From positions 5,054 through 69,053 of the forward strand of contig NW_021832986.1 of assembly GCF_006345805.1 (NCBI RefSeq): a stretch of 64,000 bases of DNA. Reading direction: 5' to 3'. Under the pieces are notes generated by a model. The model saw only the letters and a list, made by a program, of their open reading frames with translations. It did no database searches and was not told the origin of the DNA. The translations under genes were made by a program, and so were the position numbers. Positions 48,419-50,052 of this stretch are shown one piece after another. Each line of letters begins with the position of its first letter. The first letter of the stretch is position 1. This DNA is from Octopus sinensis (taxonomy: Eukaryota).

Positions 48419-50052
48419 TTATAACACAACATCTTTAATAGAACTATTCAAAAGTCTAATTGGTTTTCTTTTGTCAGGATTCAAACTAAGATTAACTATC
48501 ACACATTTTTTTAATTCTTCAATTGACTATAATTTAATAACAAAAATTATTCATAATTTTACCTTAAAAGGGAGATCATTAAAATGAAATTTGGAAAACG
48601 CTGAATCCCACAATCTAGAACACTTGTTTGGAAAATTTGTTCTGGAGGTAGGAAGTACACATTGTCCTAAAATATGGATTTTAACTCTAGTAAACATACT
48701 TTTACTTATAGCAGATACAATAAGCTCCCATGTTATTAAACTTATAGAATAAACATCAGCTGGAAGTGTTTCAATACTTGACGAATTTAGAAACCATTTT
48801 TTATTAAGTATTTCGGGTGCTACGTATCTTTTTTCTTCAACAAATGAAATATTTGGTCTTATATTCCCTGGAATTACTGCAAACTCAAAATCGCACAAAC
48901 AGTATGAATTGTCTTCAAGTTTCCGAATTGATTTTCGACCTAATAAATAAAATTTAGATAAAAAATGCTAACCGATATTACAGTGCGTAATTCGATAACC
49001 TGCAAGATATTCTATTGCCTGTGAAATATTTTCGATTATTTTTAACGATTCCGAAAATGATAATATTTTTTTATTCATCATCTCTTCCAGTGATGTGCTC
49101 TTATTACTCGAAAATATTGAATACATGTGTACTTCATTTTTATTTATTTCCGAAAAACTGCTCACGTGCCCTATTTTATTATGTATCTATTTTAATAAAA
49201 AACTGAATATATTTGGATGAATAAGTCCAAATTCATCAAAAAAAAGTTTTTCATTTTTCCAAAAATGGTATTTTTGTATTTTATATTTTTTAATAAAAAG
49301 TTTCTGATTTCCTGATAATTCAATTTTATCAAAGTTTTTTCCATATTCCCATTTTTTGTGATTATTTAAATTAAAATATTTCTTAATTATAGTTCAAGTT
49401 AAATTTTTTACATTGCCCGAACTGTTGTCGACAATTAGCATGTCATCTTTTAACCTTTTGATTATCTTTTTTGAGTAGGCCCTAAATAATTGTAGTCAAT
49501 ATTCTTACTTTTTACGACGTATAATTTCAACGAATATTATAATAAAGACAAATATCAATAAAAACAAAATTGAAATAAGATTTGATTTTATTGTATTGTC
49601 TATTTATAAATATATATTGATTATAAACCGATTGGAAGAGAATATGTGGTATCAAAATTCTTATTGCAGAAATTAAAATTGTTGCAGCATCTTAATAAAT
49701 AATCGTTTTTTGAATTATTAGACGCGCCGAAAAAACACTAGGTTAAATTATTTAAAGTCATAAATAACTGCTTGATTGGCTGTTCCACCTTTTGAAAAGC
49801 AGCCATAGTACAATGTTTTTTCCATCCTGGAGTCAGAAGAAAAAAAAGATTCAACAAAACAAAATTCAGTGTCACTTCCACCACACATATTAATTTTAGG
49901 CCCACATATATTGCAATGGCAGTAGATTTTATCAACTAATTTCTAAATGTTAATAAAAATTTCTCTGAAATCAACTGAGCTAAGAATTTGTGCATGATAA
50001 CTCATTTCTATAACATCAATAAATATAAATTATTTCTATTTATTGTATTCAT
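48419..50052 (-). CDS. TGF-beta/activin-family receptor with a degenerate (pseudo)kinase domain
   Basis: Cys-rich ectodomain YCHCNIC...FCFV...YGC...C...CCNNFNFCN, a transmembrane helix, then a kinase fold with HPNI, ITHCNIG, CDFEFAV, KRYVAPEIL and ADVYSISLITWEL. The start codon is uncertain. Confidence 0.85.

What the first reader, a model, noticed from the sequence alone, without database searches (positions are those of the whole stretch)
48419..50052. TGF-beta-family receptor with an intact ectodomain but an apparently dead kinase
Seen: a three-finger-type Cys ectodomain with the CC-x5-CN box, one transmembrane helix and an open spliced kinase fold. Nearly every catalytic motif is altered: no GxGxxG loop, VAVK becomes LFIK, HRDLKSKN becomes HCNIGRKS (catalytic Asp to Asn), DLG becomes DFE, and the GS box is reduced to NSSGN. 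APE and DVYS..WE are retained. TGF-beta receptors are normally active kinases, and the known decoy BAMBI lacks the kinase domain entirely. Inference: a receptor pseudokinase acting as a decoy or scaffold, possibly binding host ligands if the organism is a parasite.
Basis: partly seen in the sequence, partly recalled or inferred. Interest (0 to 1): 0.75.

Follow-up and report, generated by a model that had tools for sequence, protein, structure and literature searches.

The report
TGF-beta receptor with dead kinase
An intact, ten-exon gene in a fast-evolving animal genome with tiny introns encodes a TGF-beta-family receptor whose kinase has lost its catalytic residues. It is probably a non-signalling decoy or scaffold, and a similar tapeworm protein (EmTRL) has already been described.

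Summary
On the minus strand, 50005..48419, ten exons joined by nine GT..AG introns of 27-39 nt give an open 431-codon frame (0 stops; about 37 expected by chance).

- **Architecture:** a cysteine-rich ectodomain (7 Cys plus the box CCNNFNFCN), one transmembrane helix followed by RRKK, and a kinase-like domain (Pfam Pkinase E=6e-14). The best solved relatives are all TGF-beta-family receptors.
- **Lost:** GxGxxG has become KxWxxG, HRDLKSSN has become HCNIGRKS, DFG has become DFE, and helix I is missing.
- **Kept:** the beta-3 Lys, alpha-C Glu, DFG Asp, APE and the alpha-F Asp.
- **No rescue by splicing:** no alternative exon in 47.9-50.7 kb encodes the missing motifs.

- The kinase N-lobe matches type II receptors only.
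- No GS box is detectable, so "NSSGN" is not a supported remnant.
- The idea is not unprecedented. Echinococcus EmTRL (PMC10073696) is a TGF-beta receptor-like protein with a degenerate kinase.

I could not test expression, orthologues or function, because the source organism (dicyemid-like by its intron sizes) is absent from the protein collections.

Verdict: a real predicted receptor pseudokinase and a new member of a barely studied kind. Interest is moderate.

The parts
48419..50005 (-). Whole gene model: 10 exons, 431 codons plus stop. Exons are 50005-49976, 49942-49769, 49737-49629, 49599-49509, 49481-49412, 49381-49204, 49170-48973, 48939-48706, 48666-48563 and 48526-48419.
   Evidence: model; all 9 introns GT..AG, 27-39 nt. 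(0 stops against about 37 expected; exon GC 0.288 against intron GC 0.168). (DnaJ introns in the same window are 25-60 nt).
49976..50005 (-). Tentative exon 1 (MSYHAQILSS). It has no hydrophobic signal sequence, and the 5' end is unresolved.
   Evidence: Searches found no convincing in-phase signal-peptide exon upstream. The only signal-like candidate ([12 protein letters not shown], 55521-55485) would need a 5.5-kb intron. Active flatworm TGF-beta receptors also lack canonical signal peptides (PMC10073696).
49598..49942 (-). Cysteine-rich ectodomain (residues 11-105): C-x-C-x2-C-x6-C-x7-C ... C ... C, then the Cys box.
   Evidence: Pfam Activin_recp E=0.011, 17.2 bits, profile positions 2-78 of 79. 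Cys positions. No PDB hit by single-sequence search.
49663..49689 (-). Cys box CCNNFNFCN (residues 85-93; CC-x5-CN).
   Evidence: C86, C92 and N93 are invariant in the alignment with TGFBR1, TGFBR2 and ACVR2B.
49520..49579 (-). Single transmembrane helix LISILFLLIFVFIIIFVEII (residues 112-131), followed by RRKK, which implies an N-out, C-in orientation.
   Evidence: Hydropathy scan.
49412..49426 (-). Not supported as homologous.
   Evidence: No TGF_beta_GS hit at E<=10. Shuffle z=0.5 against the TGFBR1 juxtamembrane region. Type I structures that include the GS region do not match the N-terminal half.
48422..49381 (-). Kinase-like (pseudokinase) domain, residues 159-431, ending after helix H.
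   Evidence: Pkinase 6e-14. TGFBR2 2e-10. tblastn of human receptors hits only this locus. Alignment A1.
49340..49357 (-). Degenerate glycine-rich loop K-K-W-E-Y-G (GxGxxG has become KxWxxG).
   Evidence: Alignment A1.
49289..49300 (-). Beta-3 motif LFIK. The Lys (K189) is retained.
   Evidence: K189 is an invariant column.
49247..49261 (-). Alpha-C motif WKNEK. The Glu (E202) is retained; compare TGFBR2 WKTEK.
48929..48985 (-). Catalytic loop HCNIGRKS, split by the 33-nt intron 48972-48940. Relative to HRDLKSSN, R is now C, the catalytic D is N, K is G and the Mg-binding N is S.
   Evidence: HMMER alignment to TGFBR2. The H-to-DFG-Asp spacing of 20 residues matches the aligned receptors. No alternative exon exists.
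48884..48892 (-). DFE in place of DFG. The Asp and Phe are retained, and Gly is now Glu. The context CLCDF matches the aligned TGFBR2.
48725..48820 (-). Retained structural motifs of the C-lobe: RYVAPE (APE) and DVYSISLITWE (helix F).
48667..48705 (-). In-frame 39-nt intron (GTAAAAG...TTTTAG). If it is retained, SKSMFTRVKIHILG replaces the single Arg at the junction (13 more residues), and the frame stays open either way.
   Evidence: Pfam scores of the alternatives are equal: 54.1, 55.1 and 54.2 bits.
48419..48526 (-). Last exon, SIEELKKCVIVNLSLNPDKRKPIRLLNSSIKDVVL plus the stop. It aligns with helices G and H (PSLEELQEVVVHKKMRP...). Helix I and its conserved Arg are absent.
   Evidence: Alignment A1. 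No further coding exon downstream.

Best explanation
This is a real, structurally intact gene for a single-pass receptor of the TGF-beta/activin/BMP receptor kinase family. Its kinase N-lobe is type II-like and it has no GS box.

**What the sequence shows.**
- The extracellular cysteine scaffold and the overall kinase fold have been kept.
- The catalytic machinery has been lost: the catalytic base Asp is Asn, the catalytic-loop Lys and Asn are gone, two of the three Gly-loop glycines are gone, DFG is DFE, and helix I is absent.
- The fold-stabilising and possibly nucleotide-contacting residues remain: beta-3 Lys, alpha-C Glu, DFG Asp and Phe, HRD His, APE and the alpha-F Asp.
- The reading frame is intact.

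**What I infer.**
- It most likely cannot phosphorylate a partner receptor.
- It therefore acts non-catalytically at the membrane. One option is that it soaks up ligand or pairs unproductively with active receptors, a natural dominant negative with the same logic as BAMBI and as engineered kinase-dead receptors. The other is that it serves as a scaffold or allosteric partner.
- Expression, N-out membrane insertion without a classical signal peptide, ligand binding and the inhibitory or scaffold role are all inferred, not shown.
For: - **Architecture:** (model; Cys positions, transmembrane helix; Pkinase 6e-14; Activin_recp E=0.011 over the full profile length).
- **Family:** the best PDB matches are all TGF-beta-family receptors. 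The N-lobe alone matches only ActRIIB, ActRIIA and TGFBR2.
- **Motif losses and retentions:** read from the HMMER and MAFFT alignments.
- **No rescue by splicing:** no alternative exon with HRD, DFG, DLG or a Gly loop on either strand of 47.9-50.7 kb.
- **Selection on the frame:** 0 stops in 431 codons against 36.9 expected, with 30 and 52 stops in the other frames. The protein is only about 25% identical to TGFBR2 over 203 residues. That much change under neutral drift in 29%-GC DNA would have introduced many stops.
- **Introns fit the genome:** they match those of a housekeeping gene in the same window.
- **Fast evolution alone does not explain it:** all four CxxCxG zinc-finger motifs of the neighbouring DnaJ gene are kept, although its best match in the collection is only 39-40% identical.
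- **Precedent:** EmTRL, and active flatworm receptors that lack signal peptides (PMC10073696).
Against: - There is no evidence of transcription.
- No orthologue is available to measure constraint. The whole-model search found nothing, the exhaustive search with the 138-aa exon stretch found only one unrelated metagenome fragment, and the source organism is absent from the collection.
- No signal peptide was found, and exon 1 is tentative.
- Activin_recp is below Pfam's cut-off, and the ectodomain has no single-sequence PDB match.
- The domain lacks helix I, which could destabilise the fold.
- EmTRL, the closest precedent, is itself functionally untested and lowly expressed.
Confidence: 0.55

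Rival explanations
1. It is an unprocessed pseudogene caught early in decay. The pathway component became dispensable in a reduced genome, the catalytic residues, signal peptide and C-terminal helix have already gone, and the frame has simply not been hit by a stop yet.
For: - No signal-peptide exon.
- Helix I is missing.
- Many catalytic positions are lost at once. Read directly from the codons, three of the changes (R to C, D to N, G to E) are single GC-to-AT steps.
- The gene sits among transposon fragments.
- No homologue or transcript-derived protein is in the collections.
Against: - 0 stops against about 37 expected in 431 codons, and all nine splice-site pairs are canonical.
- All ten ectodomain cysteines and all the structural kinase motifs are retained.
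- A missing signal peptide is normal for active flatworm receptors.
- The absence from the collections is explained by the absence of the whole organism.
Confidence: 0.22
2. It is a still-active, atypical kinase that compensates for the missing canonical residues, as WNK or CASK do. In that case it would be a normal signalling receptor of a very divergent lineage.
For: The beta-3 Lys, alpha-C Glu, DFG Asp, HRD His and APE are retained. Some kinases that lack canonical residues are active (established knowledge). The lineage evolves fast (DnaJ's best match is 39-40% identical).
Against: The catalytic base, the catalytic-loop Lys, the Mg-binding Asn and two Gly-loop glycines are lost together, with a Trp at the second Gly position. 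No known kinase of this receptor family works without them (own knowledge).
Confidence: 0.06
3. It is a gene-model or assembly artefact. The true transcript would use other exons or a corrected frame, for example frame 1 of the penultimate exon, so that part of the 'dead' picture is wrong.
For: - Frame 1 of 48666-48562 is open for 35 codons and reads DNVYFLPPEQ..., which resembles DEYMLPFEEE of ActRIIB. A frame-corrected variant raised PDB scores by 3-6 bits.
- Exon 1 and the 39-nt intron are uncertain.
Against: - The multiple alignment places HFNDLPF..KSIEELKKCVIVNLSLNP of the unbroken frame against DEYMLPF..PSLEELQEVVVHKKMRP, so no frameshift is needed.
- Pfam scores for the three variants are equal, and the C-terminal pieces alone are not significant either way.
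- The catalytic-loop and DFE residues lie inside long open exons with conserved spacing.
- No exon with the canonical motifs exists nearby.
Confidence: 0.08

Closest known systems
EmTRL (EmuJ_000906600, UniProt A0A068YGF3) of Echinococcus multilocularis; Kaethner et al. 2023, PMC10073696
   Same: It has a Cys box preceded by 7 cysteines, one transmembrane helix and no GS box. Its intracellular region derives from a receptor kinase that lost catalytic residues, and the authors judge it to derive from a type II receptor. It comes from a parasitic spiralian. A pseudokinase or BAMBI-like role has been proposed but not tested.
   Different: EmTRL keeps 1 of 6 invariant catalytic residues, and SMART finds no kinase domain in it. 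Ours keeps the beta-3 Lys, alpha-C Glu and DFG Asp and is a clear Pfam Pkinase hit. No specific similarity showed up against the part of the EmTRL sequence held in the supplement (z of 0.7-1.7), so orthology is unshown and the loss may be independent.
BAMBI (BMP and activin membrane-bound inhibitor)
   Same: It is a membrane-bound TGF-beta-family pseudoreceptor with a receptor-like ectodomain. It cannot signal and blocks productive receptor complexes (PMC9964332 abstract).
   Different: BAMBI has only a short cytoplasmic tail with no kinase-like domain and is related to type I receptors. Ours keeps a kinase-like domain of about 270 residues, and its N-lobe is type II-like.
Type II receptors TGFBR2, ACVR2A and ACVR2B
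   Same: They are the best sequence matches. The shared features are WK-x-EK in helix C, CLCDF before the activation segment, RY-x-APE, DVYS...WE, the absence of a GS box, and a Cys-box ectodomain with one transmembrane helix.
   Different: They are constitutively active kinases with GxGxxG, HRDxKxxN and DFG. They also have a signal peptide, a loop of about 10 residues before HRD, and helix I. All of these are altered or absent here.
Receptor pseudokinases of other families (HER3/ErbB3; the kinase-homology domain of receptor guanylate cyclases; ROR, RYK and PTK7)
   Same: They are full-length receptors whose kinase fold is kept for partner binding or allosteric roles after the catalytic residues were lost. 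HER3 has the same HRD-to-HRN change (own knowledge). Schistosome receptor guanylate cyclases also lack the subdomain VIb Asp (PMC3117856).
   Different: They belong to different kinase families, with different ligands and partners. An activator role is documented for HER3, and none is documented here.

Membership tests
TGF-beta/activin/BMP receptor serine/threonine kinase family (STKR) | Extracellular Activin_recp (three-finger) domain with a Cys box CC-x4-5-CN | tested here: inconclusive
   The Cys box CCNNFNFCN and 7 preceding Cys are present. The Pfam profile is covered at positions 2-78 of 79, but at 17.2 bits against a cut-off of 20.9. There is no single-sequence PDB hit.
TGF-beta/activin/BMP receptor serine/threonine kinase family (STKR) | Single transmembrane helix between the ectodomain and the kinase | tested here: met
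   Residues 112-131, hydropathy 3.3, followed by RRKK.
TGF-beta/activin/BMP receptor serine/threonine kinase family (STKR) | Cytoplasmic kinase domain closest to STKR kinases | tested here: met
   The top 20 PDB matches are all TGFBR2, ActRII, TGFBR1 or BMPR1B. tblastn gives TGFBR2 1e-11.
TGF-beta/activin/BMP receptor serine/threonine kinase family (STKR) | Catalytically competent kinase (GxGxxG, beta-3 K, HRD D, catalytic-loop N, DFG D) | tested here: not met
   The motifs read KxWxxG, HCN, N changed to S, and DFE. Only K189, E202 and D300 are retained.
Type I receptors (ALK1-7 class) | GS domain (TTSGSGSG) next to the kinase | tested here: not met
   No PF08515 hit at E<=10. Shuffle z=0.5. 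No type I match to the juxtamembrane and N-lobe half.
Type I receptors (ALK1-7 class) | DLG in the activation segment, and an L45 loop that specifies R-Smads | tested here: not met
   The motif is DFE in the context CLCDF, as in TGFBR2. The L45 loop was not assessable.
Type II receptors | No GS box, and a kinase that clusters with type II receptors | tested here: inconclusive
   The GS box is absent, and the N-lobe hits only type II receptors at 21-23 bits. The C-lobe does not discriminate (TGFBR2 22.8 against TGFBR1 20.7). The N-terminal CxCxxC cluster looks like TGFBR1, but CxC also occurs in flatworm type II receptors. No phylogeny was possible.
Pseudokinase (sequence definition: lacks at least one of the beta-3 Lys, HRD Asp or DFG Asp) | Loss of the catalytic HRD Asp | tested here: met
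   N282 aligns with the HRD Asp of TGFBR2, ActRIIB and TGFBR1.
Pseudokinase (functional definition) | No phosphotransfer activity; nucleotide-binding status | not testable with these tools
   This needs recombinant protein. A structure model of the spliced protein could not be submitted (restriction).
BAMBI-type pseudoreceptor | Short intracellular tail without any kinase-like domain | tested here: not met
   A kinase-like domain of about 270 residues is present.
EmTRL-like degenerate TGF-beta receptors | Cys box plus 7 Cys, a transmembrane helix, no GS box, and a kinase region lacking catalytic residues | tested here: met
   compared with the description in PMC10073696.
EmTRL-like degenerate TGF-beta receptors | Orthology with EmTRL, Smp_124450 and SMESG000074605 | tested here: inconclusive
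   Only the first 375 or so residues of EmTRL were available from the supplement, and the local alignment z was 0.7-1.7. The full sequences were not retrievable.

The most novel reading that the evidence does not exclude
The protein is an expressed, conserved receptor pseudokinase of a dicyemid-like parasite that arose independently of tapeworm EmTRL. It would either trap host (cephalopod) or self TGF-beta/BMP ligands at the parasite surface, or act HER3-like as an obligatory non-catalytic partner that switches on a type I receptor allosterically. The second option would be a mode of TGF-beta receptor signalling without type II kinase activity.
Probability: 0.12. Interest if true: 0.7.

Novelty: new member of a known kind. 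Interest (0 to 1): 0.4.

Why it matters
TGF-beta-family receptors are textbook active kinases, and the pathway's membrane-level inhibitor, BAMBI, works by lacking a kinase altogether. Full-length receptors that keep the fold but lose catalysis have been noted once, in a tapeworm, and never characterised.

A second and better-preserved example would suggest that dead TGF-beta receptors arise repeatedly in reduced, parasitic spiralians. This one keeps 3 of the 5 individually invariant catalytic residues (beta-3 Lys, alpha-C Glu, DFG Asp) and has an intact fold signature, and it comes from another very fast-evolving, probably parasitic lineage. It would also make a tractable protein for asking whether such receptors act as decoys for host or self ligands or as allosteric partners. 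As it stands, this is a sequence-level prediction from one genome.

Tried and rejected
1. **Frameshift in the penultimate exon.** I suspected that frame 1 (DNVYFLPPEQIFQ...) was ancestral. A frame-corrected variant gained only 1-6 bits, and the C-terminal pieces alone were not significant. MAFFT then aligned the unbroken frame convincingly to helix G. Rejected.
2. **Deleted Gly loop.** I first thought it was deleted. The alignment shows it is present in length but substituted.
3. **GS-box remnant.** LKDDMLIVDNSSGN looks like TLKDLIYDMTTSGSGSG by eye, but it gives no Pfam hit and z=0.5. Rejected.
4. **Ectodomain subtype.** Pairwise scores do not discriminate (z of 2.4-3.0 for both types). The CxC cluster occurs in both flatworm types.
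5. **Upstream signal-peptide exon.** I scanned up to 14 kb upstream. Only one weak candidate appeared, 5.5 kb away ([12 protein letters not shown], 55521-55485), which would imply an implausibly long intron.
6. **Orthologue searches.**
   - The word-indexed search with the whole model found nothing.
It found one 115-aa type I-like fragment from an ENA metagenome contig.
   - The profile search returned almost only vertebrate TGFBR1.
   - Exact look-ups of window ORFs found nothing.
7. **Paralogues in the window.** None. No repeat overlaps the locus.
9. **Literature.** I found no statement about TGF-beta receptors or Smads in dicyemids.
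Full report
**Locus and gene model.** The feature lies on the minus strand. Three-frame translation of 48300-50200 and the ruler sequence show a chain of open segments separated by very short AT-rich gaps, each beginning with GT and ending with AG. Joining them gives ten exons, 50005..48419, with nine introns of 27-39 nt and a 431-codon frame. The spliced frame has no stop. Shuffled versions average 36.9 stops (minimum 19 in 2000 shuffles), and the other two frames carry 30 and 52. 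Exon GC is 0.288 and intron GC is 0.168. A DnaJ-type gene elsewhere in the window has introns of about 25, 26, 30 and 60 nt, so ultrashort introns are the norm in this genome. Exon 1 (MSYHAQILSS) and the in-frame 39-nt intron 48705-48667 are the least certain parts.

**Source organism.** The window is about 32% GC. It is full of transposon remnants: an intact-looking RVT_1 reverse-transcriptase ORF, an integrase fragment and a DDE_1 fragment. The DnaJ gene's best matches in a 5.8-billion-protein collection are only 39-40% identical, with no self hit. The organism is therefore absent from the collection and evolves fast. Published dicyemid genomes have a median intron of 27 bp (PMC6543705). Dicyema japonicum has a mean intron of 38 bp, 36.7% GC and 49% repeats (PMC6736024). 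The orthonectid Intoshia has a median intron of 57 bp. The window fits a dicyemid-like genome, but this is an inference, not an identification.

**What the protein is.**
- Pfam finds Pkinase (E=6e-14, residues 171-359) and a sub-threshold Activin_recp hit that spans the whole profile (17.2 bits and E=0.011 for the ectodomain alone; cut-off 20.9).
- The ectodomain has ten cysteines: C-x-C-x2-C-x6-C-x7-C, two more, and the box CCNNFNFCN.
- A 20-residue hydrophobic helix followed by RRKK comes next.
- Against all solved structures, the best matches are exclusively TGF-beta-family receptor kinases: TGFBR2 2e-10, ActRIIB 5e-9, ActRIIA 1e-8, TGFBR1 7e-7 to 1e-4.
There is no paralogue in the window.

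**State of the kinase.** This comes from the HMMER alignment to TGFBR2 and the MAFFT alignment with TGFBR2, ACVR2B and TGFBR1 (A1).
- *Retained:* beta-3 Lys (LFIK, K189), alpha-C Glu (WKNEK, E202), HRD His (H280), DFG Asp and Phe (D300, F301), APE (324-326), and the alpha-F Asp and Trp (DVYSISLITWE).
- *Lost:* the Gly loop GxGxxG reads K-x-W-x-x-G. HRDLKSSN reads HCNIGRKS, so R is C, the catalytic D is N, K is G and the Mg-binding N is S. DFG reads DFE. The receptor-specific loop before HRD is deleted. The protein stops after helix H, so helix I and its conserved Arg are missing.
- The distance from the His to the DFG Asp is 20 residues, as in the aligned receptors. This supports the splice junction inside the catalytic loop.
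- A motif scan of all six frames of 47900-50700 finds no alternative exon encoding HRD, DFG, DLG or a Gly loop. Alternative splicing within the locus therefore cannot restore them.
- By the standard sequence definition, this is a pseudokinase.
- Because K189, E202 and D300 remain, nucleotide binding cannot be excluded. The Trp at the second Gly position argues against it (inference).

- The juxtamembrane region gives no TGF_beta_GS hit. Its best local alignment to TGFBR1 is no better than shuffles (z=0.5).
- The juxtamembrane plus N-lobe half matches only type II structures: ActRIIB 23.3, ActRIIA 22.1 and TGFBR2 21.0 bits.
- The C-lobe does not discriminate (TGFBR2 22.8 against TGFBR1 20.7).
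- The N-terminal cysteine cluster looks like TGFBR1 by eye. Pairwise scores do not discriminate, however, and flatworm type II receptors and EmTRL also start with CxC.
- I call it type II-like with reservations.

**C-terminal frame.** I suspected a frameshift because frame 1 of the penultimate exon resembles DEYMLPFEEE. The corrected variant gained only a few bits. MAFFT then aligned the unbroken frame (HFNDLPF-KSIEELKKCVIVNLSLNP) to DEYMLPF...PSLEELQEVVVHKKMRP. I therefore keep the intact model.

**Gene or pseudogene?**
- *For a live gene:* the frame and all 18 splice dinucleotides are intact, even though the protein is only about 25% identical to TGFBR2 over 203 residues. All ten cysteines and every structural kinase motif survive. 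In the same window, the DnaJ zinc-finger motifs are all kept, so motif loss is not a genome-wide artefact.
- *For decay:* no signal peptide, a missing helix I, and no transcript evidence.
- The missing signal peptide carries little weight, because experimentally active flatworm TGF-beta receptors also lack canonical signal peptides (PMC10073696).
- Orthologue-based tests were impossible. The word-indexed search with the whole model found nothing. The 138-aa exact stretch found only one unrelated 115-aa receptor fragment from a metagenome. The profile search returned almost only vertebrate TGFBR1.

**Comparison with what is known.**
- BAMBI is a type I-like pseudoreceptor without any kinase domain. 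This protein keeps the domain.
- The closest precedent is EmTRL of Echinococcus multilocularis. It has a Cys box plus 7 Cys, a transmembrane helix, no GS box and a kinase region with 1 of 6 invariant residues. It is judged to derive from a type II receptor, groups with Smp_124450 and a planarian receptor, is lowly expressed, and is functionally untested (PMC10073696).
- Our protein is the same kind of object but less degenerate. It is a clear Pkinase hit and keeps 3 of the 5 individually invariant catalytic residues (K, E and the DFG Asp).
- The partial EmTRL sequence in that paper's supplement shows no specific similarity to ours. Orthology against independent origin is open.
- I found no mention of STKR pseudokinases in the schistosome kinome paper.

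**Mechanism.**
- *Shown:* the receptor architecture, the loss of catalytic residues, the retention of the fold motifs, and the intact frame.
- *Inferred:* the protein inserts N-out, can still join ligand-receptor complexes through its ectodomain and kinase-like domain, and cannot trans-phosphorylate. It would then behave as a natural dominant-negative decoy, or alternatively as a scaffold or allosteric partner. Engineered kinase-dead and truncated type II receptors are classical dominant negatives (own knowledge).
- The host-ligand idea is speculative. It is not absurd, because Echinococcus receptors respond to human BMP2 and TGF-beta.

**Verdict.** The finding is a new member of a known but barely studied kind, and its interest is moderate. 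It is limited by the complete lack of expression, orthologue or functional data.

Noticed in passing
window 5274-5463 (+): A full-length U2 spliceosomal snRNA gene (Rfam RF00004, 155 bits, model positions 1-192 of 192). ARAGORN found no tRNA genes in the window.
   Followed up: no
window about 29600-30800 (+): A DnaJ/Hsp40 type A gene with all four CxxCxG zinc-finger motifs and introns of about 25-60 nt. Its best matches in the 5.8-billion-protein collection are only 39-40% identical, so the source organism is absent from the collection and very divergent.
   Followed up: partly
window 20373-20924 (+) and 21141-21770 (+): An ORF with an ALIX V-domain hit (PF13949, 3.9e-11). It is followed by a P/N/Q-rich ORF that contains an internal direct repeat (21259-21350 against 21451-21542, 82% identical). 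This is probably one ALIX/PDCD6IP-like gene.
   Followed up: no
window 7127-7498 (+), 17597-17929 (+), 36355-36744 (-), 51680-52036 (+), about 47900-48110 (-), about 63300-63615 (-): A recurrent GC-rich ORF family (GC 0.45-0.56) of about 120 aa, with the conserved motif ...P(I/V)A(V/F)ETSG... and no Pfam hit. It is presumably part of a transposable element. Copies flank the receptor gene on both sides.
   Followed up: no
window 42933-44180 (-) and 44510-45139 (-): A 415-aa open reverse-transcriptase ORF (RVT_1, 1.2e-27), preceded by a 209-aa ORF. Together they look like a LINE-type retrotransposon that may be recently active. Other transposon fragments are DDE_1 at 1148-1501 and an integrase core at 32035-32466.
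   Followed up: no
window 38702-40080 and 62325-63721: A 1.4-kb direct repeat at 95% identity, which suggests recent duplication or two copies of one element. A more divergent inverted pair lies at 9617-10223 and 54083-54699 (76% identical).
   Followed up: no
window 48562-48666 (-), frame 1: A second open frame of 35 codons (DNVYFLPPEQIFQTSVLDCGIQRFPNFILMISLLR) overlaps the penultimate exon and loosely resembles the DEYMLPFEEE region of ActRIIB. I judged it coincidental after the multiple alignment, but cDNA would settle it.
   Followed up: yes
L001 421-768 (ENA metagenome contig ERZ27295657 k141_1249987): This was the only significant hit of the exhaustive search. It is a 115-aa exon-like fragment of an apparently active type I-like receptor kinase (AHRDINSRN, ISDLG) from an unidentified eukaryote in a metagenome, 35% identical to the window protein.
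   Followed up: partly
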